Shown here in pieces: positions 5,761-60,357 of a stretch of DNA of 64,000 nucleotides. Each line of letters starts with the position of its first letter. Positions within the stretch are counted from its first letter, which is position 1. The stretch is taken from positions 62,001-126,000 of IMG/VR virus record IMGVR_UViG_3300005965_000002; one strand, 5' to 3'. Position numbers and translations under genes: made by a program. The notes under the pieces were generated by a model, which saw only the letters and a list, made by a program, of their open reading frames with translations, did not search any database and had not been told where the DNA came from.

Positions 5761-5985
5761 TTTATCTTCTCCTTATTTTTGTTATCAATATACTTATCAA
5801 AGCGCTTTAATTAAAGAAAAAGAAAATTTTTATTATAGGATAAAAGTGCTCAATTCTACTTTAATTCTCCAAAAACCTCTGTTATATTAATATGATTTCC
5901 CTACCTTTTTAGGTCTAATAATTCTTTAATACGCCCTCTTGAGTTAAAATAGAGACGGTATAAAATGAAAGGATGTGTTTGAAAA

Positions 5986-8900
5986 ATGTTTAAGACTGCA
6001 CTAGCCTATGAGAATTGGAAAACCAAATATCGGTACGAGAACGAGACCCCCGAAGAAACTTTCCTCAGAGTCGCAAAGGCTCTAGCTTCAGTAGAAAAAG
6101 ACCCTGAATATTGGACTGATAAATTTTATAGAACTCTTGTTAAGCTTAACTCAGAAGGTGAAGCCATAGGCTTAAAATGCACTCCCGGGGGGCGTATTAC
6201 AGCTAATGCGGGAACGGATTTCAAGCATGCAACTCTCCTCAACTGCTACATTTCGGGGGCTGTTTCTAATGCTGAAATAAAATATCCTAGAAAGACCTTT
6301 GATAATAAGCTTGCTCACGATATCGTCTATAAGTCCGATAAAAATCCTGATGATCTTATTAATATATTTTTAACTATTCTGGAGCAAGCTAAAACCCTTG
6401 CTTCTGAAGGAGGGTATGGGATAAATTTTGATTTTATCCGCCCTAGAGGATCCTTAATTAAGGGTACCGGAATAAAGCACCCAGGCGTAGTTAGCTATAT
6501 GAAAATATGGGATTCCGTTTCGGAATGTATAGTAAAAGGTACAAATGATGGGTATATAGATAAACTAAAAAATTACTTAAATAAAGAAGATTTTAATGAT
6601 ACTAAGGAAATAGTAAAATCCATGACCCGTAAGGGAGCTATGATGGGTGTTCTTAGTTGTGTTTCTGGAGACACCTTAATTTCTACCATAGACGGTTTGA
6701 TTCCTATTAAACAATTAGTAGGAAAAAATCCTCTTTTATACTGTACAGGTAAGGATAGAAACATATACGTCAGAAGAGCTAATAAAGTATGGAAGACAGG
6801 AAAAAGAAAAACGCTAAAGATATTATTAGACAATGATACTCATTTGATATGCACTCCTGACCATAGAATTATGCTACATGATGGGTCTTATAAGGAGGCT
6901 AAAGACTTGGTATTAGGAGACTCATTGTCAGCATTCTATAAAAGTATTTATTGTAGAAAAGGTATTTACAAAACAAGTGCTTATAAACAAATAGGTATTA
7001 CTGGTCAAAAGAAAACCATACCTGAGCACAAAGCCGTGTGTGAATTTAAATACGGTATGTACCCCGAGATAGTTGTCGAAGAGGATGGAGTTTCCTATTC
7101 GGATAATAGCCAAGTCATACACCATATAGACGGGAATTCATTAAACAACTCCCCTGACAATATAGAACTTATATCTTTTTCAGAACACGCTGATCGCCAT
7201 AAAGAAGAAACAATAAGAATATTCGATAAAAATAGAAAAAGAATAGCAAAAGAAAGAAAAGGAAAAACTTGGGAAGAGTATTACGGACCAGAAAAAGCTG
7301 CTATTTTAAAGAAGAGAGCCAGTGAAAGAATTAAATTAAAAAGAAAAGGTAGCTGGAATAAAGGTTTAAATGGTGCTAAGTATAAGGAACATTATCAGAA
7401 CGGATTTAAAAATCAGTTTGAAGAGGCCAACACTTGGGAAGAAGCGTATGGTTTAGAGAAAGCTTTATCGGCAAAGAATAAAAAGAAAGAAACTCTTGCT
7501 AAAAATACCCTTAGTAACCATAAAGTAATAAGTGTCTCAGATTATGAAGAAATTGATGTTTTTGATATATCTGTGCCCGATTTTCATAATTTTGTGGCTA
7601 ATGGTATCTTTGTTCATAATTGTAGTCATCCTGATATTGAAGAGTTTATCAGAGCAAAACAATCCTCCGGAGTTTTAACCAAGTTTAACATATCAGTACT
7701 TATAGACGACAAATTCATGGAAGCCGTAAAAAAAGATAAACTCTATGATTTGAGCTTTAATGGCAAAATATACAAAAGGGTAAAAGCTAAAGACTTGTAT
7801 AATATTATCATGGAATCAACATATAATAGAGCGGAGCCTGGAGTTCTTTTTGTTGATAACATGCATCGAAATAATCCGCTATCCTATTTAGGTAAAGCTA
7901 CATGCTGCAATCCCTGTGGAGAGGTGCCGGGTTTGGGCTCTTTAACAACAACATGTTTATTGGGGTCTCTTAATCTTACTCAATATGTATTAGCTTACGA
8001 TAAAGAAACAGGTGCTAAATTAAAGAAACCTATTTTTGATTGGGAACAATACGAAGATGATATAAAAGTATTTACTCGAATGCTTGATAATGTAAATGAT
8101 ATTACTTATAACTCTCTTCCCTCTTATGATTGGGTTACTAAAAACATACGTCAGTTTGGTATGGGGATAAATGGTTTAGGATCTGCTTTATCAATGTTAA
8201 GAATTCCATATAACTCCAATAAATCCCACCAATTTGTTAAAAAAGCTGTATCCATTAAAGAGAATATAACCTGGCAAACTTCAGCTTTGTTAGCAAAAGA
8301 AAAAGGTACATTTCCAGCATATGATAAAGAACAATTTGAATCTACTGAATATTTTAACTCAGATCGCATAATAGACGAAACCCGTGAAATGCTCCGTAAA
8401 TACGGAGCCCGTAATGGAAAGACGACGACAAACCCGCCTCTTGGTAATACCTCAGTAATCTGCGACAATGTATCTAATGGCATAGAGCCTGTCTTCATGC
8501 TTGAGTATGAGCGTAAGGCTATCTGTAAAGATTGGCCTGAGGGTGTAAATGGGGAAAATATTAAAAAGCTCCTCAAGAAATATGATGAGAATGACTATAC
8601 ATATTGGCGGGGTGACATAAACGGAAAGACTTATTATTATGAGCCTCATAATAGAGGATTGTGTGGGGTAACAACAGTCCGCGACTATGGTTATCAATGG
8701 TTACTTGATAATTATCCCGAAGAAGATCATAGCGAGTACCTCGTAACCACAGATAAGCTCACTGTGGATGATCACGTAAACTTGCAGAGTATTGTTCAGT
8801 ACTACTGCAACCAGTCTGTTTCTAAAACTTCAAACCTTCCTTTTGGATATCCTTTTGATGAGTTTAAAGACCTTTATATGAAGGCTTGGAAGAAGGGTTT

Positions 8901-9519
8901 GAATGGTTTCACTACTTATCGTAGCGGATCTATGGAATCTGTTATTTCAGAAATAAGCAAAGCAGAAGAGAGCAAAGAGATTATAGCCCGGGACATAAAG
9001 CTTCCTACTGAATTCGTTAATGGCCCTACTCGGGTAATCAAAAGAGAGCAAATGAAGTTTTACATTCATTTCTCTTATTTACCTGAAGACTCCGAGATGG
9101 TATTCCCGGTTGCTATGTGGATATATACTAATGATAGAAACAAAGATAACTCTCGTATATGTAACAAAGCTTCACGCAATTTGGCTAAGCTGGCGCTAGA
9201 TTGCGGTGTTGATAGGGAAATTGTAGAGAAAGCCCTTGATAAAGCTAAAAAAGATTATCCACATAATAGACTTGGTAGGATGATCTCGCTATGTATGAGG
9301 CATAACGTTAGCCGAGATGATATACTGGTGTCTTTAATGGGTATTGATGGTGATCATATTTCTACACTATTAACTGCCGTACGAAAGTTTATAGGAGAGA
9401 CCATTAAGGATGGTACTAAACTAAAAGGTTACAGATGTGAAGAGTGCAATGGAGATAATGTAATCTTAGAAGGTGGTTGTAAAAAATGTCAGGACTGTGG
9501 CTTTAGTGGTTGTGGTTGA
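5986..9519 (+). CDS. nrdJ: Class II (B12-dependent) ribonucleotide reductase, intein-containing
   Basis: PGGRI, NC, GGYG..F..IRP, HPDIEEFI, EPG, NPCGE, CLLGSLNL, GIEP, QSVSKT, TTYR. C-terminal TSCPD-like domain and CxxC..CxxC ribbon. No beta subunit nearby. Confidence 0.92.
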   Translation: MFKTALAYENWKTKYRYENETPEETFLRVAKALASVEKDPEYWTDKFYRTLVKLNSEGEAIGLKCTPGGRITANAGTDFKHATLLNCYISGAVSNAEIKYPRKTFDNKLAHDIVYKSDKNPDDLINIFLTILEQAKTLASEGGYGINFDFIRPRGSLIKGTGIKHPGVVSYMKIWDSVSECIVKGTNDGYIDKLKNYLNKEDFNDTKEIVKSMTRKGAMMGVLSCVSGDTLISTIDGLIPIKQLVGKNPLLYCTGKDRNIYVRRANKVWKTGKRKTLKILLDNDTHLICTPDHRIMLHDGSYKEAKDLVLGDSLSAFYKSIYCRKGIYKTSAYKQIGITGQKKTIPEHKAVCEFKYGMYPEIVVEEDGVSYSDNSQVIHHIDGNSLNNSPDNIELISFSEHADRHKEETIRIFDKNRKRIAKERKGKTWEEYYGPEKAAILKKRASERIKLKRKGSWNKGLNGAKYKEHYQNGFKNQFEEANTWEEAYGLEKALSAKNKKKETLAKNTLSNHKVISVSDYEEIDVFDISVPDFHNFVANGIFVHNCSHPDIEEFIRAKQSSGVLTKFNISVLIDDKFMEAVKKDKLYDLSFNGKIYKRVKAKDLYNIIMESTYNRAEPGVLFVDNMHRNNPLSYLGKATCCNPCGEVPGLGSLTTTCLLGSLNLTQYVLAYDKETGAKLKKPIFDWEQYEDDIKVFTRMLDNVNDITYNSLPSYDWVTKNIRQFGMGINGLGSALSMLRIPYNSNKSHQFVKKAVSIKENITWQTSALLAKEKGTFPAYDKEQFESTEYFNSDRIIDETREMLRKYGARNGKTTTNPPLGNTSVICDNVSNGIEPVFMLEYERKAICKDWPEGVNGENIKKLLKKYDENDYTYWRGDINGKTYYYEPHNRGLCGVTTVRDYGYQWLLDNYPEEDHSEYLVTTDKLTVDDHVNLQSIVQYYCNQSVSKTSNLPFGYPFDEFKDLYMKAWKKGLNGFTTYRSGSMESVISEISKAEESKEIIARDIKLPTEFVNGPTRVIKREQMKFYIHFSYLPEDSEMVFPVAMWIYTNDRNKDNSRICNKASRNLAKLALDCGVDREIVEKALDKAKKDYPHNRLGRMISLCMRHNVSRDDILVSLMGIDGDHISTLLTAVRKFIGETIKDGTKLKGYRCEECNGDNVILEGGCKKCQDCGFSGCG
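6658..7620 (+). mobile_element. Intein (321 aa) with HNH endonuclease in RNR
   Basis: VLS|CVSGDTLIST ... CTPDH ... FVHN|CSHPDI. Internal HHIDGNSLNNSPDNIEL (HNH). Confidence 0.93.
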
Positions 9520-11212: not shown

Positions 11213-12115
11213 TTAGTCCTTCTCTATACTGATGATTTTTTTATACAGTACAATTGTTTCTTCAGAAGGGGTTATATCTTTTTCTACAAAAATTATTCTT
11301 ATTCTTCTAGGGTAAGGAAGCTCAGGACGTTTATCTATAATTTCTGGATCAGAGTTATCAGGGGCGAACTTAACTCTAAATTTTTTATCGTATATAGTAA
11401 CTACTATTGGTTCTCTTATAATTTTTCTTAAGGGGTGTATTGATATATACTTTTTAAATCCCCACCCATCGAGGAGTATCCTGCTTTTTTCTTCTAAATT
11501 TATTTTAATGTGAACATCCCCAAAATTGCCATTAAGATCTTGGTTTCCTTTACCTCTCACTATAGCAGTTTTTTCATTACATTCTTTAAGATCTACTCTG
11601 AACTCTATAGGAATTACTTGAAAGGTAAACTTGGTACCGGAGCACTTCGGGCAAGCAGAGTCTTTCTTATAACCTATACCCTCGCAAGACGGGCAAGTAG
11701 GATCGTTATTTAATAGCGACATTACTTTGTTTTTTATCTTACCTTTGCCGGAGCAAATGTCGCAGATACCATCTTTTTTAAGATAGCTTCCTGTGCCTTC
11801 ACAATCGGCGCACAGCACCCGTCTGTTGATATGTATATACTTGGGCCTGCCAAAGTATATATCATCGATAGAGACGGTTACAGACGTGTATATGAAGCCT
11901 TTGGTGTGGGTAGGTTTGCTTGTTTGGATCTGATCTAAAATAGAAGGGTCTTCTCTAATGCTTTTTATCGCCCTAACTATTTCAGAAAATTTTTTAGCAG
12001 TCTGAGGATCTTTGGTTTTATCGGGGTGGTATAGTATAGCTAAACGTTTGAAGCTTTTTTCTGCTTCTTTGTAAGTACATCCGAGGGGTAATTCTAAAAC
12101 ATCTAATGGATTCAT
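11213..12115 (-). CDS. dnaJ: DnaJ-like co-chaperone
   Basis: J domain with HPD, four CxxCxGx Zn repeats, C-terminal GxG..GD; lacks the G/F-rich region. Confidence 0.88.
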   Translation of the reverse strand: MNPLDVLELPLGCTYKEAEKSFKRLAILYHPDKTKDPQTAKKFSEIVRAIKSIREDPSILDQIQTSKPTHTKGFIYTSVTVSIDDIYFGRPKYIHINRRVLCADCEGTGSYLKKDGICDICSGKGKIKNKVMSLLNNDPTCPSCEGIGYKKDSACPKCSGTKFTFQVIPIEFRVDLKECNEKTAIVRGKGNQDLNGNFGDVHIKINLEEKSRILLDGWGFKKYISIHPLRKIIREPIVVTIYDKKFRVKFAPDNSDPEIIDKRPELPYPRRIRIIFVEKDITPSEETIVLYKKIISIEKD

Positions 12116-13526: not shown

Positions 13527-13970
13527 TTAAGAATACTCGAAGACAAATCTATAATTAACGTTAGTAGTGCTCCCTGTTTCGAGGGCACCTACCTGCACGT
13601 CCAGCCAGATATAATCTCCATTTCCTTGTGTATCTAAGTTTATGTTAACACTTCCTGCCCCTGTAGCCTGGGTATTTACGGTAAAATGGTCTGATATGTA
13701 AGGGCCTGGGAGTGACGTGTCAGAGGTCCAAGACCTAACGTCAGCAGCGAATTCATCGCTTACGAGATATCCGAATTGAGACTGATTATAGCCTCCGTTA
13801 TTCTGTAGATAAAGCTTTAAATCAGTAAAACTATCTTCAGATGTTTTGAGCGGCCTAACAAGAACAGGCAGCGCACCGTGTTGACCCGCTCTAATATTTC
13901 CAAAATTTAGACCGGTTACATCGCTGGCTAATAAATTACCCGTCCTGGGGCTATATGCTCTAACCTTCAT
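13527..13970 (-). CDS. Putative virion protein, paralog of 13061-13510
   Basis: Same shared motifs; preceded by the TAATTATCTCTTAATA motif. Confidence 0.6.
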   Translation of the reverse strand: MKVRAYSPRTGNLLASDVTGLNFGNIRAGQHGALPVLVRPLKTSEDSFTDLKLYLQNNGGYNQSQFGYLVSDEFAADVRSWTSDTSLPGPYISDHFTVNTQATGAGSVNINLDTQGNGDYIWLDVQVGALETGSTTNVNYRFVFEYS

Positions 13971-14036
13971 ATACTTAATTCCGATAGCTAAGAATACTCT
14001 ATTCCTTAACTTAAGTATATTAAGAGATAATTATCC

Positions 14037-15083: not shown

Positions 15084-15459
15084 GGGTTGATATCCTTAGA
15101 TTGCCGTTATCTTCGTCTACGGTAAAAATTTGTAAGATACCATCTTTTACGTATCCTATATTCCTTGCAATGACCTTTATTTCCCTATTACTCATATCTT
15201 GGTATCCTAGCTGACTAAAAAACCAATCATCAGCCTTTATAAACGGATACTCATCTTTTGCTATGGATATTTTAGATTCACCACGCCATAATAATTCAAG
15301 CGCCACTAACTTGTCCTTTTTTATCTCGAACCAGTTAGTGGCGTGATTTTTTCCGTTGCTATCAGTATAGTTTTCTTTTTCTCTTAATTTACGGCCATCA
15401 TCATAATAGGCGATAAACCCGGTGAAACTCTTTCTGCTATTTCCTTCTCTTGGGGACAT
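15061..15459 (-). CDS. Hypothetical protein
   Basis: Overlap-coupled ORF in operon. Confidence 0.55.
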   Translation of the reverse strand: MSPREGNSRKSFTGFIAYYDDGRKLREKENYTDSNGKNHATNWFEIKKDKLVALELLWRGESKISIAKDEYPFIKADDWFFSQLGYQDMSNREIKVIARNIGYVKDGILQIFTVDEDNGNLRISTRDAKAKK

Positions 15460-15778
15460 GGAATTTTGGCCTTTTGGGTCTTGATGGTTTAATTGCTTTA
15501 GGCTTTTTTGGTTTGTGAATTTTTGGCTTTTTCGGCTTTGGTGGCTTATGTTTTTTGTGCGTCATCCAATTAGGAGTGGTACGCTTGAATAGTTTTTTCG
15601 TTTTACCGAAAAGCTTTGTTCTCTTTAAATAACGCCTTCTTTGAAGCCTAATCTTTGCTTTATGCTTTCTGTAATAGAGCTTAGCCTTTAATCTTTGGGC
15701 TGGTGTTCGCCTTTTGAGCTTTTTCACCAGCCTTCTTTTGTATGCTCCAAGTATTACTCTTCTTACTGACACCGGCAT
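15437..15778 (-). CDS. Very basic Lys/Arg-rich protein (putative nucleic-acid condensing protein)
   Basis: Composition dominated by K/R with KPKKPK repeats and no acidic residues. Confidence 0.55.
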   Translation of the reverse strand: MPVSVRRVILGAYKRRLVKKLKRRTPAQRLKAKLYYRKHKAKIRLQRRRYLKRTKLFGKTKKLFKRTTPNWMTHKKHKPPKPKKPKIHKPKKPKAIKPSRPKRPKFHVPKRRK

Positions 15779-15828
15779 CTTACATTCCTTTTTAAGAGAT
15801 TTGTTAAGGTGCCAGTATAAAAAGATTA

Positions 15829-16380
15829 TTACTTAATAAGTCCGTGCTCTTTTTGGAATTTATATAGATTATACGCGGGGGAGTTTGATAACTCTCGTTC
15901 TATCCTCTTATATTCGTCTAAAAGAGGAGCCGCTCTCTCAGGGGTCATACCCTTTCTAAGGAGCTTCTTACGTATCTTATGCAATTCTTTAAGTGGTTTA
16001 ATAACCTCTTTATACCTTCTCGATGTCCCAGCCAAAGATGAGGAGTTCTTTAGACCGTGGCAGACTTTACAGAGATAAAGCTGCTCTTTTTTTGGGAATT
16101 TTGAAGGTAGATAGAGTTTTAAACAATGCCTGCCACATTTAGGGCACAGAATATACCAGCGAGCACCACCTAAATGGTTAGACTTATGGTGGTATGTGAA
16201 AGTCTGATTATTAATCGTGAAGTTTTTCAGACTAGCATACATTCGCCTGAAAAATTCCTCTTCGGTATCGTCTGGGTATTTCTTTTTGATTTCTTTTTTT
16301 ACTTTTTGAGCGATTACGGCAAAATCTAATCTGTCCGTGGACTCAATAGGTAGGTATTTGGATTTTTGCATGTCAGTCAC
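15829..16380 (-). CDS. Zn-finger protein of unknown function
   Basis: GGARWYILCPKC..LY..CKVCHGL. Confidence 0.6.
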   Translation of the reverse strand: MTDMQKSKYLPIESTDRLDFAVIAQKVKKEIKKKYPDDTEEEFFRRMYASLKNFTINNQTFTYHHKSNHLGGARWYILCPKCGRHCLKLYLPSKFPKKEQLYLCKVCHGLKNSSSLAGTSRRYKEVIKPLKELHKIRKKLLRKGMTPERAAPLLDEYKRIERELSNSPAYNLYKFQKEHGLIK

Positions 16381-16440
16381 CTTTGAATAAGCGACAATCT
16401 ATTCTTATCTATGGATAAACAAATTATTAAAAGATAATTA

Positions 16441-34571: not shown

Positions 34572-35480
34572 ATGCCTAATAAGTATTTGATTACTGCTAA
34601 AGATTCATATTTTGCTCGTGAAAAAATTTTTCAGATAGCTGAAAAACACGATATACCGGATCCAAAAATTTTTGTAGAGCACAAGGACTTCATAGAGGAA
34701 GCCTACCAGGGTGACCTTTTTAATGATAGTCAAAAAGCCCTGGCTTTAATACCTCTTACAACAGAATCCCTGCCCCACATACTTAGTCTTTGTAACCAGA
34801 CTACTTCTGATGTTCTAATTCTAGTAGATTACGGTGGTCTATCCAAGAATCGAAACTACACAAAGATCAAAGCTCTTTGTGAGATTGTCCCGGTTAAAAA
34901 GTTTAGTGATAAAGAATCGGTTTCCTGGACAGCGGCTACCCTTAAAAACCACGCCTTTTCTTATGAGCCGGGCGTACCCGAGTTAGTAGCTGCTTATAAA
35001 GGACCTGATGCTCAAGGTATAATGAATGAGATAAAAAAGTTGGATTTGTATTTAGACGATAAAAAAGTTACAAAAAAAGTTTGTAAAACAATCATTTCCC
35101 GTGTAGGAGAGGGTAAAATGTTTGATTTTACAGAGCACTTCTTTAGAAAGCACAAAAAGGAAGTTATTGAGGAGTTTAATTCATTTTCAGAATCTTCATA
35201 TATAGGTTTGGTGCATCTACTGATTTCTCAGTGTGACCGGATATATAAGGTAGCTGTTTATAGAGAGCAAAAGATGTCAGCGGAAGAAATAGCAGAACTG
35301 ATAGGTATACCCCCTTTTATCATAAAGACTAAGATTTTTACAGCGCTGAATGTTTTTAATAAGGTAAAATTATTAAAGTTAATGGATATGTTTAATGAGC
35401 TAGATAAGCTCTTAAGATCATCTCCATATAATAAGAGATTGATGTTCGAGTCCTTTTTGCTGAAATCCTTTAACTTGTAA
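34572..35480 (+). CDS. holA: Clamp loader delta subunit
   Basis: NEIKKLDLY, FDF, GIPPFIIK, L.ELDKLLRS pattern of HolA. Confidence 0.78.
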   Translation: MPNKYLITAKDSYFAREKIFQIAEKHDIPDPKIFVEHKDFIEEAYQGDLFNDSQKALALIPLTTESLPHILSLCNQTTSDVLILVDYGGLSKNRNYTKIKALCEIVPVKKFSDKESVSWTAATLKNHAFSYEPGVPELVAAYKGPDAQGIMNEIKKLDLYLDDKKVTKKVCKTIISRVGEGKMFDFTEHFFRKHKKEVIEEFNSFSESSYIGLVHLLISQCDRIYKVAVYREQKMSAEEIAELIGIPPFIIKTKIFTALNVFNKVKLLKLMDMFNELDKLLRSSPYNKRLMFESFLLKSFNL

Positions 35481-35551
35481 TAATCTTTTTATTATTAAGG
35501 TAAAGCGGAGACTACAGTGACTGTAAGAAGCATAAAAAAAGGGTATGCCGG

Positions 35552-36872: not shown

Positions 36873-36875
36873 GTT

Positions 36876-37193: not shown

Positions 37194-37206
37194 AAAATAG
37201 TACATA

Positions 37207-38317: not shown

Positions 38318-38343
38318 TATTAATAGATAATAAGGAAACTTAC

Positions 38344-40243: not shown

Positions 40244-40250
40244 GAAAGAC

Positions 40251-41198: not shown

Positions 41199-41211
41199 CA
41201 GGGGAGGACAT

Positions 41212-41838
41212 ATGAAGCATAGCGTATGTCGTAGTATGGATCCTTTTGAGATACAGAGCAGATATTCATCTGAAGATTATTCTTTCTTTAGCTTTAAAGA
41301 AAGCTCATTTTGTTTAGATGATTTTGAACCGTTTATTGATAAGCTGCCTCGTAGAGAAAAAGATCTAATTGAAATGTACTACAAAAGGCAAAAAAAGCAG
41401 AAAGAAATAGCGGAGTTTTTTAATGTGACCCAGGGCGCTGTTTCTCATAGGCTCTCTAGAGCAAGAAAAAGATTAAAATTTTTGAGGGATATGCCCAAAG
41501 CTACAGGTAATCTCGAAGAAGATTTATCCACACATTTTACTGATTTTGAGATTGATATCATAAAATATATGATAGAGACTACGTGTCAGTCTAAAACTGC
41601 TGATATACTCAACAAGAAGCACGGGCTAAAAGGTAAAGAGAAGATGACGCAAGTTAAAGTAAGACACAAGTTTGATAGAGCAATATCAAAGATAAATAAC
41701 CTTAAGAAGAAAAACCCGGAACTCAATGTATACTTTGAACTTACGAAGTATGTACAGAAAAATCCGTATATGCTGCACGAGGTAATTTTGCCGCATTTCG
41801 ATAGAGGCTATAAGGTAAACTATAAAGGTGTTTTCTAA
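41212..41838 (+). CDS. Sigma-70 region-4-like HTH protein (tandem HTH)
   Basis: LPRREKDLIEMYY..QKEIAEFFNVTQGAVSHRLSRA; a second similar HTH follows; GGAGG RBS before ATG 41212. Confidence 0.75.
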   Translation: MKHSVCRSMDPFEIQSRYSSEDYSFFSFKESSFCLDDFEPFIDKLPRREKDLIEMYYKRQKKQKEIAEFFNVTQGAVSHRLSRARKRLKFLRDMPKATGNLEEDLSTHFTDFEIDIIKYMIETTCQSKTADILNKKHGLKGKEKMTQVKVRHKFDRAISKINNLKKKNPELNVYFELTKYVQKNPYMLHEVILPHFDRGYKVNYKGVF

Positions 41839-42189
41839 TGAGTAGGGAAAGTGGGGGCGGTTCTTCAGTCACAGAGGTAACTGGTACGGCCCAGAGGACT
41901 CCTATGAAGAAGTTGTTAATAAATTTTATTCAAAAAACCATAGGCTACCAGACAGTGTTACCTATCCCGTTTACGCAAAAGTTAGAGTGAGTGATGATAA
42001 GAAGTTACTGAGTTGTGAGAGGAATTTTAAGATAGAAAATCAGATGAAAAAAACTCTACCTTTAGTGGTACAAAAGATCAGAAATAAATAAAGTTTAGAT
42101 ATAATTATCTATTAATACATATCCTCCATTAGAATTTGGGAGCTTTGCAGTAAAATTCTGAAAAAGCTAGTTCTAATGGAGGTTTTCTT

Positions 42190-42594: not shown

Positions 42595-42604
42595 GGTGGC
42601 GAAT

Positions 42605-52695: not shown

Positions 52696-55600
52696 ATGGC
52701 TGGGAGAAAAACAGGGAACAAAGGAACAACACCAAAGACTACGGTCACTAAGACTGCCTCTGAGGATTTAACTGTCCAGGAAGTACGTGGGGTAAAACCT
52801 ACTATGAAATTAACTGATAAAGAAAAACAAGTACGTGCGTTGAAGAAGTATGCTACTACCTCCTTTGGTTTTGGTAGTAGGGTAAGTTCAATGTACGGAA
52901 ATACGATGTTAAGTAATGAGGGTAATTTTTATTCTCCCCAGCTAAGTACAGACTTTCTTGAAAAACCACAAAATTTAAGAGAGAGACGGGCTTGGTATAG
53001 GCACTTCTATAATAGTAATGAGTTTGTAGGATCAGCAATAGACTTGCATTCCACCCTGCCTTTATCCAAAGTAAAACTGGAAAAGCCTAAGTGTAAAAAC
53101 CCAAAAATGGCACAATATGTTTATACGTTTTTTGAGGACATGTGCCAAGATATGAGACTGTTCAAGGTTCTTACAGAAATAAGCCACGAGTACTGGCTGA
53201 TGGGAAATTGTCTGGGAAAGAACTCAAAGCTTAGGTGTGTGGACTCTTATAAGAAAGCTGTTGATGTATCAGTAGGGGATTATGTACTTACTCATGAGGG
53301 TAGATTTAGAAGAGTAAAGAATAAATTTTCTCGGTACTCAGAAAAAATAACAAATATAGAAATGTGGAAAACTTATAAGAAGTTGGATCTTACAGAAGAA
53401 CATCCGGTTGAAGTTTATAGAAATGGTAAATTTGAATTTATAGAAGTCAAAGATCTAACGGAAGATGATTACATACGTGTAACATGGGTAAAAGATATAG
53501 ATGATGTAAAAACCATAAATTACTTAGAGAGTTTTAAAAATTTGGATATTACAGAATCTGGATATACGAAAGAAACAAATATAAAGAGAAAAAGAGCTAA
53601 GAAATCTCATGAATGCAGATTAAAGATGCTATTTTGGTTATCCAATTTAACGGAGCCTGTGATCAAGTCTAGAGATGACATAGCCTTTGATTTGAATGTT
53701 GAAAGAAAGACACTAGATAATGTTTTAACACAGTTAAATAAAGAATTTGGTAAAAGCAGATATAGTAGAAGAATAGGAGCGTCCAACTATCAAAAAGGAT
53801 CAAGGGTAGAGTGGCTACCTTTTAAATATTCTGATGTTGATAGCTGTTATGAGATAAAAAGGATAGAAAATTTTACCACTCCCCACACGGTTGATATTGA
53901 TGAAGATTTCTGCTATTTACTCGGGTACTGGATTGGGGATGGAACAATTTCAAGAGATAATAGTAGAAAGAATATTTGGGGAAGAGCTATATGGAATATT
54001 GTTTTTGGTGATAGCTCTGATAAACAAAAAGAAAAAATATATAGAATATTGCAGGAAAAGATAGGTATACAATGTATTAAGGAATGGGATTCCTACAGAG
54101 ACTGTGGAGATGGTAAAGTTAGTAAGCTTAGTACTGTTAAGATTAAGAGTAATCCTGCGTTTGTAGAGTGGTGGGCTAATAATTTTGGAGAGACTACAAA
54201 AGGTGATAATAGGAAAAAGATACCTTTATGGGTTTCTAAATTGCCCTTAAATAAGCTATATGCTCTTATAGCTGGTTTAGTTGATTCTGACGGATGTATA
54301 TCAAATGGTGTTTGTGATATTAGTTTATCTTCAGAATCATTGATTAGTTCTATACAGGAAATTTTGCTGAAATGTAATATTGTGCCTAATATTAATAAAA
54401 AGGAAGGAACTAAAGGAACAGGTGTTTTAAACAATAATGGAAAAATCTATAGCGATGTATATAAAGTTGTATTTAAAGCTAGAGATTTTTCTTCTTTTGT
54501 AGGAAACTATTCTATAAAGGGCGCAAAGTATTCGGATATAAAGCAAGAAAAGCCATACCTAAGCAAATACATAATTACAGATAATGGTGATATAGCATTT
54601 AAAGTAAAAAAGATAACAGAATCTGAATATAATGATATGGTTTTTAACTTTGAAGTGGAAGAAGACCATACTTTTCAAGTAGAGGGTTTTTCCACACACA
54701 ACTGTTTTCCTTTTGCCGAAGACCACGATCCTTACGATGGTGATGAGCAGACTGTAGCCCATCTTAAAGAAGAGGGTAGACAGAGAGCTGAGTACCTGTG
54801 GGAAAATTTTAAAGTAAGAGACAAAGACCCTAATTACAAAGGTTGGAGAAAAATTATCATTTTACCCCCGGATCAGGTTCGGGTAAGAAATGTCCTGTTG
54901 TCCGACCAAGAATCAATTATAGAATTCATGCCTGACCCGGAGACAAAAAAGTTAATAATGGGAGAGGGGTTAGGTAGGGTGTATGGCTATAGTGAAAGTA
55001 TGCAAATAAGCGAGATGGAAAAGAACATAAGCGTACCTGAAAAAATGAGGGATCAGATTAGAGAGGGGGGATCCATACCTCTAGATACTGATCCATATAC
55101 AGGTTCTCACGTTTACCACTTAGCCAGGAAAAAGAGCCAGTATGAGACACTGGGTGTATCAATATTAGAGAGATGTATCAATACCCTCCTTTTTGCCGAT
55201 AAAATCCGTCAGGCTCAGACTTCTATAGCCTCTCGACATATGACCCCTATTAGAATTGTATGGGCAGAGGAGCTCAATGAGGCGGATGTTGAAGCTCTGA
55301 GAGAACAGGTAGACCTTGCTCTAGTGGATCCAGATTATTCCATTATAACCAATTACCAAGTAAATTGGGAAGAGATGGGAAGTAATGGAAGATTGTTGGA
55401 GTTATCTACAGAGTACGAGCATATAGAGAATTCTTTGTTTGCTGGTTTAAATGTCACTAGGGAAATTCTGACCGGTGAAGGTTCATACTCTGGTAGCCGA
55501 ATTACCCTGGAGGTAATGAATCGAATCTATCTGCTCTTCCGAGATAGCATCCAAGAGTACATAGAAAATTATCTCTTTAAGCCCGTGGCCCATAAAAAGG

Positions 55601-56139
55601 GATTTGTTGAGAAAGATGAGTTTGGAAGAGAGCGGTTGATTTATCCTAAGCTGTCCTTCACGAGACTCGCTATTAAGGATAATGATGTTTATTTTGACCA
55701 GGTAAATCAGCTATATCAGAAGGGTTCGGTATCAGTAGATGTTATCTTGGATATGCTTGGTATTGATCCTGACGCTACAAAAGAAAAAATTGAAGCGGAT
55801 CTATTCACTGTTAATGACGCCTCCTTTAACGCTTTTATGCAGTCCCTATACACCGCTGTCGGATCTGACTTCTTCCAAAAGTATGATGTTGAAGGGGCTC
55901 TGGCTAAGTATCTCAGGATACCGGAGCTTGTGCAGCCTGCCGGAGAAGAAGAAGGAGGTTTAGGCGGAGCAGGTCTGGGAGGCGGACTAGGCGGAGGAGA
56001 AGCTCGGTTTGCTTCAGAAGATACTTCTGATATGACAGAGAGAAGGAAGGCGGCATTGCAGAAATTGATGAAGATAGCTATCAAAAACCCAGATAAACTG
56101 GATAAGCTAGCTCAAATTTTCGACCGTAAGAGAATATAA
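52696..56139 (+). CDS. Portal protein, intein-containing
   Basis: FVGSAIDLHS..P, EYWLMGN, HLARK..Y..G.SIL pattern; ~650 aa after splicing; lies between terL and the protease. Confidence 0.8.
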   Translation: MAGRKTGNKGTTPKTTVTKTASEDLTVQEVRGVKPTMKLTDKEKQVRALKKYATTSFGFGSRVSSMYGNTMLSNEGNFYSPQLSTDFLEKPQNLRERRAWYRHFYNSNEFVGSAIDLHSTLPLSKVKLEKPKCKNPKMAQYVYTFFEDMCQDMRLFKVLTEISHEYWLMGNCLGKNSKLRCVDSYKKAVDVSVGDYVLTHEGRFRRVKNKFSRYSEKITNIEMWKTYKKLDLTEEHPVEVYRNGKFEFIEVKDLTEDDYIRVTWVKDIDDVKTINYLESFKNLDITESGYTKETNIKRKRAKKSHECRLKMLFWLSNLTEPVIKSRDDIAFDLNVERKTLDNVLTQLNKEFGKSRYSRRIGASNYQKGSRVEWLPFKYSDVDSCYEIKRIENFTTPHTVDIDEDFCYLLGYWIGDGTISRDNSRKNIWGRAIWNIVFGDSSDKQKEKIYRILQEKIGIQCIKEWDSYRDCGDGKVSKLSTVKIKSNPAFVEWWANNFGETTKGDNRKKIPLWVSKLPLNKLYALIAGLVDSDGCISNGVCDISLSSESLISSIQEILLKCNIVPNINKKEGTKGTGVLNNNGKIYSDVYKVVFKARDFSSFVGNYSIKGAKYSDIKQEKPYLSKYIITDNGDIAFKVKKITESEYNDMVFNFEVEEDHTFQVEGFSTHNCFPFAEDHDPYDGDEQTVAHLKEEGRQRAEYLWENFKVRDKDPNYKGWRKIIILPPDQVRVRNVLLSDQESIIEFMPDPETKKLIMGEGLGRVYGYSESMQISEMEKNISVPEKMRDQIREGGSIPLDTDPYTGSHVYHLARKKSQYETLGVSILERCINTLLFADKIRQAQTSIASRHMTPIRIVWAEELNEADVEALREQVDLALVDPDYSIITNYQVNWEEMGSNGRLLELSTEYEHIENSLFAGLNVTREILTGEGSYSGSRITLEVMNRIYLLFRDSIQEYIENYLFKPVAHKKGFVEKDEFGRERLIYPKLSFTRLAIKDNDVYFDQVNQLYQKGSVSVDVILDMLGIDPDATKEKIEADLFTVNDASFNAFMQSLYTAVGSDFFQKYDVEGALAKYLRIPELVQPAGEEEGGLGGAGLGGGLGGGEARFASEDTSDMTERRKAALQKLMKIAIKNPDKLDKLAQIFDRKRI
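53209..54702 (+). mobile_element. LAGLIDADG intein (498 aa) in portal
   Basis: LMGN|CLGKNSKL..LTEEHP..STHN|CFPF; LLGYWIGDG and LIAGLVDSDG. Confidence 0.93.
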
Positions 56140-56546: not shown

Positions 56547-56843
56547 ATGATGGCGAAAGTTCCAAGACCCATGGTTAAACAGATTGAAAATATCGAAGAG
56601 ATTATTAAAAGTCTCTGCGATCTTGTGAACGATAGTAAAATAAAGCTTGAGTATTATGGCAAGGATTTTTTGGAAGAGTTGTCAGAAATCAGGCAGTCAG
56701 GTTTGGAGTTAAGAGATCGTTTGGAAATTTTTAAGAATAAGATGGAGTATGCTGCTAACGAGCAATTTAATAGCAGCAGCCGGTTCGCATCTACAGATTC
56801 CGTGAAAAGAGTGGTAGATGGATATTTATCTAGAAACTCCTAA
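56547..56843 (+). CDS. Hypothetical head-module protein
   Basis: AGGAG RBS; RFAS motif. Confidence 0.55.
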   Translation: MMAKVPRPMVKQIENIEEIIKSLCDLVNDSKIKLEYYGKDFLEELSEIRQSGLELRDRLEIFKNKMEYAANEQFNSSSRFASTDSVKRVVDGYLSRNS

Positions 56844-56869
56844 CATAATCTATTAATATCACTCAATAA

Positions 56870-58087
56870 GTGACTGTAGTGTATCAGAAAGGATCTGTAA
56901 TGGCCAAAAATATATATAGTGAAAGTCAGGCAAGTCAGAACGATTTACGCTATTTACTAGGTCCCTGTGAAAATAAGGGTATAAAGATAGATCTTTCTGA
57001 TGCCAAAGCTAAAGCAAAAAATCTTTTGCTGAAGCATCCAGAGATTCTTCATGATGGTAGACATCTTTTTCGAAATGAAAATGGCACTACTATTGTACAG
57101 GAAATAGTACCCCGAGGAGACCAAGGCCTGCCCCGTGTTTTAAATCAAGGTGACTTAAATGATATGGATCTTAAAGGTTTGGCTGATTATGCAGCTAAAT
57201 TAGTTGATCCCTGTCTTCTCCGGTACGACAGGAGAGTTGCCCTGGAAGATGCTTTAAAGAAGGCAATTTGGGAAAAAGATTCTGGAATGTATCAAGGTAA
57301 AGTAAATACCAATACATTTTGTTTACTCATAGATTTAATGGGTAATAACACAAAGAATGCTAGCGGTGATACTGAAGAGGGTAATAAAGAGAAACCGGAT
57401 AAAGAACCTGAGGAAAAGAAGGTAGTACAGGTAACTGAGGTCACAAGGAAAATAATGACACCTGAGCAAGAAGCTGAGTTAAAGGGTGAAGGTACTGGTG
57501 ATACTAAAGGTGTACCAGAAAGTGACAAGATAAAGCATCGTAAGTTCCTGGAGAGAAAGGAAGAGGAAAAGAGTCAAGAAGAATCTGATAAACCTCGTCG
57601 TAAAAAAGATAAAACCAATCCTGAAAAGGAGAATAAGAAGATGGATAAAGCAGCAGCCTTAAAAAAGATCGAAGCCATGCAAAAAGCAATCGAGGAGATG
57701 AGGGGTGTACTTGCTTCTGATGATACAGAAGAAAGAACAGCATCCGAAGAAGTGAATGGTGTAGCTCCTATCATAGACTCTCTTGATAAGATCGCTGGTG
57801 AATTAGAAGAAACCGGTGACATTGAGCTCATGAAGGTAGCTTACGGTATTGACGTCGTTTCTGATGTCCTGGAAGGTAAGAAAGAAGCCAAAGTGCTTGA
57901 GCATGATCTTGATGAAAAGTTCATGAGAGAGTATTTCAAGGGTGGTGTGCGCGAAGGTGAAGCTGATGAAAAGAAATATATGAAGCAGTTTGATAATGAC
58001 GATTCCGCTGCTGTAGAAAACGTCAAAGATAAGAAGAGTAGAACTGCTTCCGAGAAGACTAAAAGACCGTACACCAGAATCGACTAA
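56870..58087 (+). CDS. Charged putative internal head protein
   Basis: Late-type motif upstream; KNAS and RTAS motifs; start may be MAKNI. Confidence 0.55.
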   Translation: MTVVYQKGSVMAKNIYSESQASQNDLRYLLGPCENKGIKIDLSDAKAKAKNLLLKHPEILHDGRHLFRNENGTTIVQEIVPRGDQGLPRVLNQGDLNDMDLKGLADYAAKLVDPCLLRYDRRVALEDALKKAIWEKDSGMYQGKVNTNTFCLLIDLMGNNTKNASGDTEEGNKEKPDKEPEEKKVVQVTEVTRKIMTPEQEAELKGEGTGDTKGVPESDKIKHRKFLERKEEEKSQEESDKPRRKKDKTNPEKENKKMDKAAALKKIEAMQKAIEEMRGVLASDDTEERTASEEVNGVAPIIDSLDKIAGELEETGDIELMKVAYGIDVVSDVLEGKKEAKVLEHDLDEKFMREYFKGGVREGEADEKKYMKQFDNDDSAAVENVKDKKSRTASEKTKRPYTRID

Positions 58088-58681: not shown

Positions 58682-58684
58682 CCT

Positions 58685-60253
58685 ATGGCAATGCCTAAGT
58701 ATGGACACGCTGTTGTCGTAGGACACAGTATTGATCCTGGAAGATGGATAGATAAGAAGGTTGCTCCCGGAAGGGTAAAAGTAGCAAAAAGAGTCATAGC
58801 TGATTATGACCCGTCTAGGTGGTTGCTTAGCCATGCTACTATTATTGCGTCTGTTGACGTTGATCAGAAGGATCCAAGTGATCCGAAAAGTAATTATCTG
58901 ATTAAGCCCGAATACTCCGTATTTGTTAATAATAACGGAGACTCCTGGGAAAGAGGCCTTCTTAAAAATTGTTACCACACCTTTATAGGTGCCGATAACT
59001 ACGTCGAGCACGTTCAGATTCCCGAGCTCTCTAAGGGAAAAATTATCGATGCCGCTATACGTGAGGTGCCTTTCGCTAAAGATTCCGAGGGTAATGATTT
59101 AACAACTCTCTACGTTGATATTCTTGTAGCTACCAGTTTAAAGCATAAAGACCTTGTGCAGAAGATTAAGACTGGGGACTATAATGCAATGTCAATGGGC
59201 TGCCTTATAGAATATTCTCAGTGTAGTAAGTGTGGTAATATAGCCAAGGATGAGACACAAGCATGTAAGCATATCCTCTATTTTAAGAAAAATTTCTTCT
59301 ACGATGAGGGAGGAAATAAGAGGATCATAGCTGAGCTTTGTGGTAGATCTGAAGATCCTGATAGTTGTAAGTTCATAGAAGGTAGCTGGGTTAAGAAACC
59401 CGCCTTCGAAGGAGCTCTTCTTAGGAATATTGTTAATCCTTCAGAAGGTATGGGTGAAAAGTTACAAAATGCTATAGCGGTCCCTTCTGCCGTTCCCACT
59501 ATGACTGACTTTTCAAAAGCCGCATCGTTAACTGCTGGTAATTTAGTACGCCAGATACAGGCCCAGGAAGAGGGTGAAGCACCTGCAGAAGCGCCAAAGG
59601 ATGATGCTGGTTTTCCTGAAGCTCCCGAAGGAGAGGGTGCTCCGTTAGAGCTGGATAAGCCCGGAGAAGAAGCCACCCCGGATGCGGGAGGAGCTGGAGG
59701 TGGTTTAGGTGGTGTACCTGCAGAAGGTCCCGGTGCTGAGCCTGTCGCTCCAGTCCCTGAAGGAGATGCTACTGTTAAGGAAGTTAAGGATCTCCTAAAG
59801 AAACATGTTTTACAAGAAATACGTGATGAATTAATACAGAAGAACTATAATGTAGAACCAAGAAATTTAGATGTTAATCCGGGCCTGGAAAATGATATGA
59901 ATGAGTCTCTAGTTAAAGAGGCAACATTCAAGAGGGTAATGGCTTCTGCAAAGAAATTAGGTAATGATAGATTAACAAACGGATTATTTATACTTACAAA
60001 TTTGAGGGATTGGAAAAGCCTAAAAAGATATGGTTATAGTCGAGAAGATGTAATAGGAATGATGCACTATATAGATAAAGTTGCTTCTAAAGAACCGCTT
60101 GATACTGATGTTGTAAAGGCTCTGGTTTCTATAAAGGAATCATCGGATTTAACAGATTTTTTTACTGAAATTATTGTAGAAACAGGTAAAGAATTAACCG
60201 CTAGCCAGGCAAAAAAGTTAGCTGGTTGGCGAAAAATATTGAAAAAAATATAA
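58685..60253 (+). CDS. Prohead (maturation) protease with Zn finger and acidic linker
   Basis: NNNGD, VEH..GKIIDA, AMSMG, CSKC..CKH, E.SWV..PA; lies between portal and scaffold. Confidence 0.72.
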   Translation: MAMPKYGHAVVVGHSIDPGRWIDKKVAPGRVKVAKRVIADYDPSRWLLSHATIIASVDVDQKDPSDPKSNYLIKPEYSVFVNNNGDSWERGLLKNCYHTFIGADNYVEHVQIPELSKGKIIDAAIREVPFAKDSEGNDLTTLYVDILVATSLKHKDLVQKIKTGDYNAMSMGCLIEYSQCSKCGNIAKDETQACKHILYFKKNFFYDEGGNKRIIAELCGRSEDPDSCKFIEGSWVKKPAFEGALLRNIVNPSEGMGEKLQNAIAVPSAVPTMTDFSKAASLTAGNLVRQIQAQEEGEAPAEAPKDDAGFPEAPEGEGAPLELDKPGEEATPDAGGAGGGLGGVPAEGPGAEPVAPVPEGDATVKEVKDLLKKHVLQEIRDELIQKNYNVEPRNLDVNPGLENDMNESLVKEATFKRVMASAKKLGNDRLTNGLFILTNLRDWKSLKRYGYSREDVIGMMHYIDKVASKEPLDTDVVKALVSIKESSDLTDFFTEIIVETGKELTASQAKKLAGWRKILKKI

Positions 60254-60357
60254 AAATATTTAGATAATCCTAATTATCTATTAATATTATCAAATTTAAC
60301 GAATTGGAATATACGAAATTTTTTCTGATTTCTCAGCAATAAGTCAGGAGGATATGA

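What the first reader, a model, noticed from the sequence alone, without database searches (positions are those of the whole stretch)
5916..60286. Second motif TAATwATCTwTTwATA marks probable late transcription units
Seen on +: 42102-42117, 56844-56858, 60271-60286, 35478-35494 and a variant at 5916-5931. Seen on -: 14018-14033, 15816-15831 and 16425-16440. Most copies sit upstream of head or virion-like genes, which links the distant 12-16 kb cluster to the head module. One copy (38318-38333) points antisense to the primase/dnaX operon. Inference: a phage-specific late promoter or operator with no sigma70 -35 element.
Basis: partly seen in the sequence, partly recalled or inferred. Interest (0 to 1): 0.65.

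Follow-up and report, generated by a model that had tools for sequence, protein, structure and literature searches.

The report
Conserved late-type promoter of huge phages
A sharply bounded 16-base motif (TAATA-NN-CT-NN-TAATA) sits just upstream of about 36 genes of this uncultivated huge phage and at the same genes in distant relatives, so it is almost certainly a phage-specific promoter class for structural, lysis and some other genes; what reads it is still unknown.

Summary
All nine listed copies exist. The window is part of a 258.6-kb virus record in which a matrix scan finds 35 strong sites against 1.2 expected. Of the 51 sites at 12 bits or more, 42 are intergenic (6% of the genome is) and 35 face a gene start within 120 nt. 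The motif is a contiguous 16-mer with no -35 element. A start codon with a good ribosome site 25 nt downstream puts the transcript start within about 10 nt, so the motif is the core promoter. It is conserved at orthologous positions in relatives of 26-50% GC, giving a clade consensus TAATA-NN-CT-NN-TAATA. The antisense copy is conserved in the four closer relatives. It heads the head module, scaffold/capsid, tail sheath, tail fibre and endolysin units. It also heads a replication operon, homing-endonuclease genes and many unknowns, so 'late' is only partly shown. A separate sigmaA-type class, TTTAAA-N17-GTATATT, drives tRNAs and the phage's RpoD-like sigma gene. No phage RNA polymerase was detected, even in a 98%-complete relative. 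Likeliest reader: host polymerase redirected by a phage factor, the best candidate being the conserved sigma4-like protein at 41212-41838. This is inferred, not shown.

The parts
5916..5931 (+). Motif copy (variant TAATAATTCTTTAATA, 17.6 bits), 54 nt before the ATG of the ribonucleotide reductase (intein-bearing) - dUTPase - small ORF - amidase endolysin unit
   Evidence: gene functions
14018..14033 (-). Motif copy (22.2 bits) before 13527-13970 and four further - strand genes ending in a DnaJ-like protein (11213-12115)
15816..15831 (-). Motif copy (21.2 bits), 37 nt before the ATG of 15437-15778; the unit continues into the glycosyltransferase gene 14037-15083; a copy is kept before the orthologue in G003
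16425..16440 (-). Motif copy (23.4 bits) before 15829-16380 (unknown, 183 aa); a weak overlapping second match at 16414
35478..35493 (+). Motif copy (17.4 bits) after holA-like 34572-35480, heading the operon 35552-41990 (primase-like, dnaX clamp loader, 5'-3' exonuclease, sigma4-like protein); conserved in G002, not in G001
38318..38333 (-). Antisense copy (18.1 bits) filling the 26-nt spacer between the primase-like gene and dnaX; same place and orientation in G001, L044 and L046 (19.8-19.9 bits) and weakly in G002 (12.8 bits)
42102..42117 (+). Motif copy (23.0 bits) at the start of the head/packaging module, directly after the sigma4-like gene; conserved in G001, G002, L044 and L046
42123..42191 (+). 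Hairpin (dG -28.9 kcal/mol, z -3.6) plus U-run immediately downstream of the 42102 copy, before ORF 42190-42594: a possible leader terminator/attenuator or short RNA
   Evidence: kept in close relatives, little covariation
56843..56858 (+). Weak motif copy (ACATAATCTATTAATA, 12.6 bits) before 56870-58087 (405 aa); the orthologous position in G001 has a 19.3-bit copy and G003 an 18.6-bit copy
60271..60286 (+). Motif copy (23.0 bits), 71 nt before the ATG of the acidic scaffold-like gene 60358-61431, followed by 61492-62043 and the major head protein 62094-62975; conserved in G001 and G003
41212..41838 (+). Candidate reader of the motif: 208-aa protein with a sigma-70 region-4 HTH (residues 32-97) and a second helical domain that weakly resembles sigma4. 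It is the last long gene (a 50-aa ORF, 41838-41990, follows) of the replication operon, 264 nt before the 42102 copy. The family has about 440 members, all in phage-like contigs

Best explanation
The 16-mer is the core promoter of a second, phage-specific transcription class (middle and/or late) in a clade of uncultivated huge phages. Shown: it is strongly over-represented, almost only intergenic, oriented towards the next gene, sharply bounded, and has no -35 box. It is conserved at orthologous genes across relatives of very different base composition. Inferred: transcription starts within about 10 nt of its 3' end. The host RNA polymerase, not a phage one, uses it after being redirected by a phage-encoded factor. 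The sigmaA-type class (TTTAAA-N17-GTATATT) comes first. It expresses tRNAs, the phage's RpoD-like sigma and, from the divergent 32.4-32.8 kb region, presumably the replication operon that ends with the sigma4-like protein 41212-41838. It has two HTH-like domains in tandem, which would suit the two TAATA repeats 11 bp apart on one face of the helix. The 35478 copy would then give positive feedback on its own operon. The conserved antisense copy at 38318 would fire against that operon and damp it.
For: Statistics and placement. Sharp 16-bp boundaries, no flanking conservation. Spacing to ribosome-site-plus-start codons: median 43 nt, mostly 36-61. The strong site at G000 19677 has its ATG 25 nt downstream with a good ribosome site, which forces the transcript start within about 10 nt. 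Nine sites sit at divergent (-+) junctions where a promoter is required and no sigmaA-type element faces the gene. Conservation at orthologous spacers: G001, G002, L044, L046. Before the tail sheath gene in 7 of 8 IMG/VR relatives, GC 26-50%. In the 98%-complete G003, 12 of 14 matches at <=1 mismatch are intergenic. Nine of 12 clean G003 sites with an orthologous downstream gene also have a copy in this genome, hypergeometric p = 9e-6. Downstream genes include the head module, scaffold/major head protein, tail sheath, collagen-like tail fibres and endolysin. The separate sigmaA-type class drives tRNAs and the sigma gene. No RNA polymerase family was hit in this record or in G003. Candidate reader: sigma4 fold, Z 8-9.7. 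Second domain: best matches are again sigma4, Z 6.0-6.3. The putative recognition helix is invariant in 49 homologues. LR745208.1 has no motif match, and its homologues differ in both helices. The gene position matches the Ltr late activators, including the Sigma70_r4 family LtrA (PMC3753634).
Against: Promoter function, the start site and timing are therefore all inferred. About half of the sites head non-structural or unknown genes, including a replication operon, so 'late' may be wrong for part of the regulon. A sigma4 domain on the beta flap normally reads DNA near -35. This motif lies at about -24 to -8 or closer, so the proposed reader would have to work differently from sigma or from Ltr-type activators. 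The second-domain match is below the level the tool treats as reliable. The difference in the LR745208.1 homologues is what any distant homologue would show. In G003 the spacer after the sigma4-like gene carries a different repeat (CCCGATCGGGTATATTT, twice) instead of this motif. Divergent phage polymerases can escape Pfam models, and the PF00940 search had no positive control.
Confidence: 0.6

Rival explanations
1. The motif is read by the phage's own RpoD-like sigma factor (G000:C1 4855-5799, - strand) as a long 'extended -10' promoter that needs no -35. TAATAW at the 3' end would serve as the -10 hexamer and the upstream ten bases would be read by altered regions 2.4 and 3.0. This would resemble phiEco32 gp36 promoters or the -35-less middle/late promoters of Thermus phage P23-45 (the latter from my own knowledge).
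For: A complete sigma (regions 1.2, 2, 3, 4) is encoded and sits behind a sigmaA-type promoter, so it would be made early. Compared with SigA of Staphylococcus, Bacillus and Clostridioides, the residues at the -12 and extended -10 contacts are changed (WWIRQAITRAI becomes WWIRQQVLEAL; RIPVHMVE becomes RIPINRVP). The Thr-to-Leu and His-to-Asn changes are shared by the G003 orthologue. If TAATAW is the -10 hexamer, the start would lie about 8 nt after the motif, which fits the spacing data. In phiEco32 a phage sigma reads a single motif centred at -11.5 (PMC12276001).
Against: The -35-reading residues of region 4.2 (TRERxRQ) are intact. A canonical two-box class with a 17-bp spacer is conserved with this sigma across the clade: TTGACA-N17-aGTATATT in G003 and TTTAAA-N17-GTATATT here. 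That class is the more natural partner for this sigma. No sigma-70 family member is known to me to read 16 contiguous base pairs of duplex upstream of -7.
Confidence: 0.17
2. The motif is the promoter of a phage-encoded RNA polymerase that was not detected. A T7-type single-subunit enzyme uses contiguous promoters of about 17 bp that start with TAATA-like and end with TATA-like bases next to the start site. A very divergent multisubunit or YonO-like enzyme is another possibility.
For: The motif is one contiguous, sharply bounded block of 16 bp abutting the likely start site, with AT-rich ends and a specific centre. Three genes have their ATG 13-15 nt after the motif without a ribosome site. 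One small ORF has a ribosome-site-like GAGAG at +2 to +6, which would fit a start right at the motif's end. This record is only 55% complete.
Against: No hit to PF00940, PF00562 or PF00623 in the 258-kb record, and none to PF00940 or PF00623 in the 98%-complete relative G003 that keeps the motif. The large unknown proteins tested gave no polymerase domains. Iyer et al. (PMC7824862) report that the jumbo phages that encode sigma factors (their group 2) lack their own RNA polymerase.
Confidence: 0.12
3. The motif is not a promoter. It would be an operator for a repressor or roadblock protein, or a signal in the RNA (a processing or translation-control site in 5' leaders).
For: A strand-specific element 36-61 nt before start codons would also fit a leader RNA signal. 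The antisense copy between the primase-like gene and dnaX could be a roadblock. The two TAATA repeats look like a protein-binding site.
Against: No sigmaA-type -35 or -10 accompanies the motif within 25 nt on either side. At nine divergent junctions, some with spacers of only 40-125 nt, it is the only conserved element facing the gene, so those genes would have no promoter. An RNA signal would not explain the conserved antisense copy.
Confidence: 0.08

Closest known systems
Ltr late transcriptional regulators of Gram-positive phages (RinA, ArpU, LtrA = Sigma70_r4 family, LtrB, LtrC; PMC3753634, PMC3152322)
   Same: [quoted passage not shown] Its proposed target is a DNA repeat lying between that gene and the module.
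   Different: Ltr systems switch on a single late promoter upstream of terS in temperate phages of about 40 kb. Here about 36 copies are spread over at least 258 kb, and the motif lies in the core promoter itself, not upstream of one. The protein is larger (208 aa, two HTH-like domains). Binding is untested. NCBIfam gave no ArpU or RinA match among the 25 families shown, of 38 hit.
T4 late promoters (TATAAATA at -10, no -35; gp55 + gp33 + sliding clamp gp45), from established knowledge; 'minimal sigma' and gp33-like HTH proteins of group 2 jumbo phages (PMC7824862)
   Same: An AT-rich late promoter with no -35 element that uses the host polymerase with small phage-encoded sigma-like proteins. 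A phage sliding clamp and clamp loader are encoded here too. Homing-endonuclease genes carry their own copies.
   Different: The motif is 16 bp, twice the length of the T4 element, and has a different sequence. No gp55 or gp33 homologue was identified. The replication genes here are of the bacterial Pol III type. A link to the clamp is not supported by any result.
phiEco32 middle/late promoters read by phage sigma gp36 (AATGTA centred at -11.5; PMC12276001)
   Same: A single conserved block in the -10 region defines the phage-specific class, while sigma70-type promoters serve the early genes.
   Different: gp36 is a two-domain sigma whose C-terminal domain still contacts the -35 region with the help of gp79. 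The motif here is longer and is a direct repeat.
T7-type single-subunit RNA polymerase promoters (established knowledge)
   Same: A contiguous block of about 17 bp, an AT-rich 5' part, a specific centre, an AT-rich 3' part next to the start site, and many near-identical copies.
   Different: No such polymerase gene was found in this record or in a 98%-complete relative.

Membership tests
Sigma-70/sigmaA two-box promoter | -35 hexamer about 17 bp upstream of a -10 hexamer | tested here: not met
   Information content is at background from 25 nt upstream to the motif's first base. The genome's other class does show TTTAAA-N17-GTATATT.
Sigma-70/sigmaA two-box promoter | TATAAT-like -10 hexamer about 7 nt before the start site | tested here: inconclusive
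   The 3' end reads TAATA plus A/T, which matches TATAAT at positions 1, 2 and 5, and at 6 when T follows. Start sites were not mapped.
Phage-specific promoter class (general) | Over-represented, intergenic, co-oriented with the downstream gene at a narrow distance | tested here: met
   35 sites against 1.2 expected. Of 51 sites at 12 bits or more, 42 are intergenic and 35 have a co-oriented start within 120 nt. Median 43 nt to the start codon.
Phage-specific promoter class (general) | Conserved at orthologous genes in diverged relatives | tested here: met
   G001, G002, L044, L046; seven of eight tail-sheath loci; G003 regulon overlap p = 9e-6.
Phage-specific promoter class (general) | Transcripts start at the element, at a defined time in infection | not testable with these tools
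Ltr (LtrA-type) late activator system | [quoted passage not shown] | tested here: met
   Sigma70_r4 E = 4e-12; sigma4 fold Z 8-9.7. Gene 41212-41838 is the last long gene (a 50-aa ORF follows) before the head/packaging module; the large terminase gene is at 46257-48134.
Ltr (LtrA-type) late activator system | Protein binds a DNA repeat upstream of the packaging genes and is sufficient to activate | not testable with these tools
   A TAATA-N6-TAATA direct repeat lies 264 nt after the gene. Binding and activation need experiments.
Ltr (LtrA-type) late activator system | One late promoter drives the whole late cluster | tested here: not met
   About 36 dispersed copies, including the left arm and one antisense copy.
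T4-type late transcription | gp55-like (sigma2-like) and gp33-like factors | tested here: inconclusive
   PF04542 finds only the RpoD-like sigma. No specific gp55 or gp33 profile was searched, and the record is 55% complete.
T4-type late transcription | Sliding clamp acts as activator through C-terminal tails of the factors | tested here: inconclusive
   A DnaN-like clamp (18127-19290) and clamp loader genes are present. The sigma4-like protein has a conserved disordered tail. The one complex job gave no verdict.
T7-type single-subunit polymerase promoter | Cognate single-subunit RNA polymerase gene in the genome | tested here: not met
   PF00940: no hit in G000 (258 kb) or in G003 (98% complete). 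Caveat: that search had no positive control.

The most novel reading that the evidence does not exclude
A 208-aa protein made of two sigma4-like HTH domains in tandem (41212-41838), found in hundreds of phage-like contigs including huge-phage genomes, acts as a sigma substitute or appropriator. It would read a direct repeat, TAATA-N6-TAATA, as a -35-less core promoter on the host polymerase. It would also regulate its own operon, through one sense copy (35478) and one conserved antisense copy (38318). That would be a way of specifying promoters not described for any sigma, Ltr or T4-type system.
Probability: 0.22. Interest if true: 0.75.

Novelty: new member of a known kind. Interest (0 to 1): 0.5.

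Why it matters
Huge phages known only from metagenomes have hundreds of genes of unknown function and no experimental system. A conserved, easily scanned promoter motif, together with the companion sigmaA-type class, divides their genomes into two transcription classes from sequence alone. That assigns unknown genes to a regulon shared with virion and lysis genes. It also gives defined DNA fragments and one or two candidate proteins for in vitro work. The motif keeps its all-AT arms in a genome of about 49% GC, which shows that its reader is phage-encoded or at least strongly conserved. If it is the sigma4-like protein, it would add a new way of redirecting bacterial RNA polymerase.

Tried and rejected
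1. Reversed-sequence control for the matrix scan. Rejected: the motif read backwards resembles itself shifted by one base, so block shuffles were used instead.
2. Megablast of 8 kb against the phage collection: no match.
4. The search for related loci with the RpoD-like sigma: no relatives found.
5. The genome search on the JGI loci L042, L044 and L045: these records are not held.
6. Terminators upstream of the copies: only 3 of 36 have a clear hairpin plus T-run, so the copies are not mainly placed after terminators.
7. Complex prediction of the conserved C-terminal tail of the sigma4-like protein with two copies of the phage DnaN-like clamp: no verdict. This is no evidence either way.
8. Foldseek of the sigma4-like protein against PDB: nothing at E <= 0.001, though the weak top rows were sigma4 domains.
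9. Idea that the 809-aa - strand protein in the late region could be a YonO-like polymerase: rejected, because it carries Mom-like and DUF7487 domains.
10. Idea that the motif is limited to low-GC relatives, prompted by the different repeat after the sigma4-like gene in L042: rejected once the tail-sheath loci and G003 were scanned.
11. Covariation support for the hairpin after 42102: only one compensatory pair, so it is not established as a structured RNA.
12. Rfam on the window: no family at gathering score.
13. The phage G paper (PMC12484599) and the huge-phage survey (PMC7162821) describe no comparable motif in the passages that my term searches returned.
Full report
WHERE THE WINDOW LIES. 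The window is bases 62001-126000 of a 258,580-bp linear IMG/VR virus record. CheckV rates it 55% complete, and its GC content is 38.6%. The standard code gives 94% coding density, so no other code was used. Strong Shine-Dalgarno sequences precede most genes. The nearest large terminase in the phage collection belongs to an unannotated 485-kb 'uncultured phage', LR745208.1, at 35% identity. This is therefore a member of an uncultivated huge-phage lineage. The left arm (0-95 kb) is mostly on the - strand. It holds tRNAs, NAD salvage genes, a topoisomerase, RecA, a RecD2-like helicase, a DnaN-like clamp and many small unknown genes. From about 95 kb onwards nearly everything is on the + strand. 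First come the clamp-loader, primase-like and exonuclease genes. Then come the head module: large terminase 46257-48134, portal 52696-56139, protease 58685-60253 and major head protein 62094-62975. Tail sheath and fibre genes follow outside the window.

THE OBSERVATION. The window holds 11 matches at up to 2 mismatches, against 2.5 expected, and no shuffle reached 11. A position matrix was built from the matches and run over the whole record. It finds 35 sites at 16 bits or more against 1.2 expected, and 51 sites at 12 bits or more against 7.1 expected. The control was shuffling within 50-bp blocks, which preserves local composition. Of the 51 sites, 42 are intergenic although only 6.2% of the genome is intergenic. 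Thirty-five have a gene start on the same strand within 120 nt. Only two or three strong intergenic sites point the 'wrong' way. Aligning the sites shows that information content falls to background on both sides of the 16 bases. There is no -35 box and no conserved downstream hexamer.

WHAT KIND OF ELEMENT IT IS. For each site I took the first start codon preceded by a ribosome-binding site. Its distance from the motif's 3' end is mostly 36-61 nt, with a median of 43 nt. One strong site (G000 19677, 21.6 bits) has its ATG only 25 nt downstream with a good ribosome site. The transcript must therefore start within about 10 nt of the motif. Three other genes start 13-15 nt downstream without a ribosome site. 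The motif is thus the core promoter region itself, not an upstream activator site.

Nine sites lie at divergent junctions, where a + strand gene sits among - strand genes and must have its own promoter. In these spacers, some only 40-125 nt long, the motif is the only recognisable element facing the gene. This argues against a pure operator or an RNA-level signal.

A second, separate promoter class exists in the same genome. It reads TTTAAA, a 17-bp spacer, then G and TATATT, which is the classical sigmaA geometry. It lies before tRNAs, NAD genes and the phage's sigma gene, and in the divergent 32.4-32.8 kb region.

CONSERVATION. Two IMG/VR fragments, G001 (46 kb) and G002 (21 kb), are syntenic with window 17-63 kb at 40-70% protein identity. 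Two JGI contigs, L044 and L046, are syntenic with the central part of that stretch; their sigma4-like proteins are 74-76% identical to the window's. Copies occupy the orthologous spacers in these relatives:
- After the sigma4-like gene (equivalent to 42102): all four relatives.
- Before the 405-aa gene (56843) and the scaffold-like gene (60271): G001.
- Before 35552: G002.
- The antisense copy between the primase-like gene and dnaX: all four, though weak in G002.

Eight further relatives were found through the tail sheath protein (55-61% identity, GC 26-50%). Seven of them carry a copy in the spacer just upstream of the sheath gene; in the eighth, a 6-kb fragment, the sequence before the gene holds none. 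The arms stay the same while the inner bases vary: TAATATTCTTCTAATA, TAATAAGCTATTAATA, TAATAACCTTCTAATA and TAATACTCTTCTAATA. The clade consensus is therefore TAATA-NN-CT-NN-TAATA, which is two TAATA repeats 11 bp apart.

One of these relatives, G003, is a 466,729-bp record rated 98% complete, with 49% GC. It has 14 matches at up to 1 mismatch against 3 for the control, and 12 of them are intergenic and co-oriented. Twelve clean G003 sites have a downstream gene with an orthologue in this genome. For nine of them the orthologue here also has a copy upstream (hypergeometric p = 9e-6). These include the orthologues of window genes 15437-15778, 56870-58087 and 60358-61431, and of the tail sheath gene. 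The more distant LR745208.1 (55% GC) has no match at all and shows other enriched intergenic words.

IS IT 'LATE'? Copies head the following units:
- The head/packaging module (42102).
- The 405-aa gene (56843).
- The scaffold and major head protein unit (60271).
- Tail sheath and two collagen-like tail fibre genes.
- The unit that ends in an amidase endolysin (5916).
These are, and this is typical late content. Copies also head ribonucleotide reductase and dUTPase (in the same unit as the endolysin). They head the primase-like/dnaX/exonuclease operon (35478), free-standing HNH and HTH genes on the opposite strand of the left arm, a glycosyltransferase, a DnaJ-like protein and many unknowns. 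About half of the strong sites are in the left arm. The gene content fits 'middle plus late' as well as 'late'.

WHO READS IT. No RNA polymerase family (PF00940, PF00562, PF00623) was detected in this record. PF00940 and PF00623 were also absent from the 98%-complete G003. The PF00940 search had no positive control, and very divergent enzymes could be missed. Two phage proteins of the sigma family are encoded.

(a) A complete RpoD-like sigma lies at G000 4855-5799. It is nearest to SigA of Firmicutes. Its -35-reading residues are intact, but its residues at the -12 and extended -10 contacts are altered. It is conserved in G003. In G003 the two-box class reads TTGACA-N17-aGTATATT in 46 intergenic copies. 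This sigma is therefore more naturally paired with that class.

Residues 32-97 fold as a sigma4 domain (Z 8-9.7). The C-terminal half, folded alone, again finds sigma4 domains first, but only at Z 6.0-6.3, which is below the level the tool treats as reliable. The family has about 440 members of 200-208 aa, on contigs of up to 470 kb. The putative recognition helix is invariant. The gene is the last long one of the replication operon (only a 50-aa ORF, 41838-41990, follows it). It lies just before the head module and its motif copy. This is the position of the Ltr late activators of Gram-positive phages, one family of which (LtrA) is defined by Sigma70_r4 and binds DNA repeats before terS (PMC3753634). 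In LR745208.1, which lacks the motif, the two homologues differ in both helices.

I therefore rank the readers as follows: host polymerase plus this protein first, the RpoD-like sigma second, and an undetected phage polymerase third.

COMPARISON WITH KNOWN SYSTEMS. The element works like a phage-specific late promoter without a -35 box. Known examples are T4 TATAAATA, and phiEco32 AATGTA at -11.5 read by gp36 (PMC12276001). It differs from both in length (16 bp) and in its direct-repeat form. It differs from Ltr systems in copy number and in lying within the core promoter. It resembles T7-type promoters in form, but no matching polymerase was found. Iyer et al. (PMC7824862) describe jumbo phages that lack a polymerase but encode RpoD-like and 'minimal' single-HTH sigma factors. 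This lineage fits that picture, and here a candidate promoter motif can be added to it. I found no description of this motif in the papers searched.

VERDICT. This is a real, strongly non-random and deeply conserved cis element. It is very probably a promoter class that includes the virion and lysis genes. It is a new promoter consensus within a known kind of system. The reader of the motif and the timing remain to be shown.

Noticed in passing
window 4630-4636 (-), 5787-5793 (-), 32409-32415 (-), 32545-32551 (-), 32766-32772 (+); about 25 sites in G000: A second promoter class with sigmaA geometry: TTTAAA, 17-bp spacer, G+TATATT. It lies before tRNAs, NAD genes and the phage sigma gene, and in the divergent 32.4-32.8 kb region. 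In the 49%-GC relative G003 it reads TTGACA-N17-aGTATATT (46 intergenic copies). The G immediately before TATATT is conserved across the clade.
   Followed up: partly
window 42123-42191 (+): A long hairpin (dG -28.9 kcal/mol, z -3.6) plus a U-run starts 6 nt after the 42102 motif copy, before ORF 42190-42594. A terminator-like structure right behind the head-module promoter suggests an attenuator, antitermination control or a short RNA. It is kept in G001, L044 and L046, not clearly in G002, and shows almost no covariation.
   Followed up: partly
window 38318-38333 (-): The antisense motif copy fills the 26-nt spacer between the primase-like gene and dnaX. It is conserved in position and orientation in four relatives. 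It would fire against the operon that encodes the sigma4-like protein, which could give negative feedback.
   Followed up: partly
window 3-2996 (-), 5986-9519 (+), 27102-30920 (-), 52696-56139 (+); G000:C1 151773-153305: Inteins with homing-endonuclease domains interrupt NAD synthetase, the ribonucleotide reductase large subunit, the RecD2-like helicase (two Hint regions), the portal protein and a 510-aa protein. This is an unusually heavy intein load.
   Followed up: no
G000:C1 3076->3164-3718 and 45996->46052-46843 (outside the window): Opposite-strand HTH and HNH endonuclease genes embedded in the - strand left arm each carry their own motif copy, much as T4 homing-endonuclease genes have their own late or middle promoters.
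   Followed up: partly
window 14013-14033: The motif copy on the - strand overlaps a GTATATTAA word on the + strand. The same arrangement occurs at G000 45996/46013. The motif's 3' end followed by TAC automatically creates the other class's -10 word on the opposite strand.
   Followed up: no
L042 10604-10688 and 5208-5221 (same sample as, and similar in length to, the 467-kb record G003): In this relative the spacer after the sigma4-like gene carries two copies of CCCGATCGGGTATATTT, with a third variant before another gene, instead of the TAATA motif. The same genome uses the TAATA motif elsewhere. This may be a third promoter type.
   Followed up: partly
window 41212-41838, residues about 184-199 of the protein: The disordered C-terminal tail of the sigma4-like protein carries a nearly invariant peptide (NLYMxHEVxLPHF). 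It looks like a short docking motif, and its partner is unknown.
   Followed up: partly
G000:C1 4855-5799 (-): The phage RpoD-like sigma keeps the -35-reading residues. It has Leu for the Thr that reads -12 and Asn for the His that reads the extended -10, and both changes are shared with the G003 orthologue.
   Followed up: partly
G000:C1 153302-155731 (-): A lone - strand gene inside the + strand virion region has its own sigmaA-type promoter. It encodes an 809-aa protein with Mom-like and DUF7487 domains, which hints at DNA base modification.
   Followed up: no
window 42190-42594 versus 42476-42946: Two overlapping ORFs in different frames. The first is conserved in G001 and is probably the true first gene of the head-module unit. 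The second probably starts downstream, near 42618.
   Followed up: partly
window 62094-62975: The major head protein is 92% identical to that of G001 and 82% to that of G003, while neighbouring proteins are 30-70% identical. It is far more conserved than the rest of the module.
   Followed up: no
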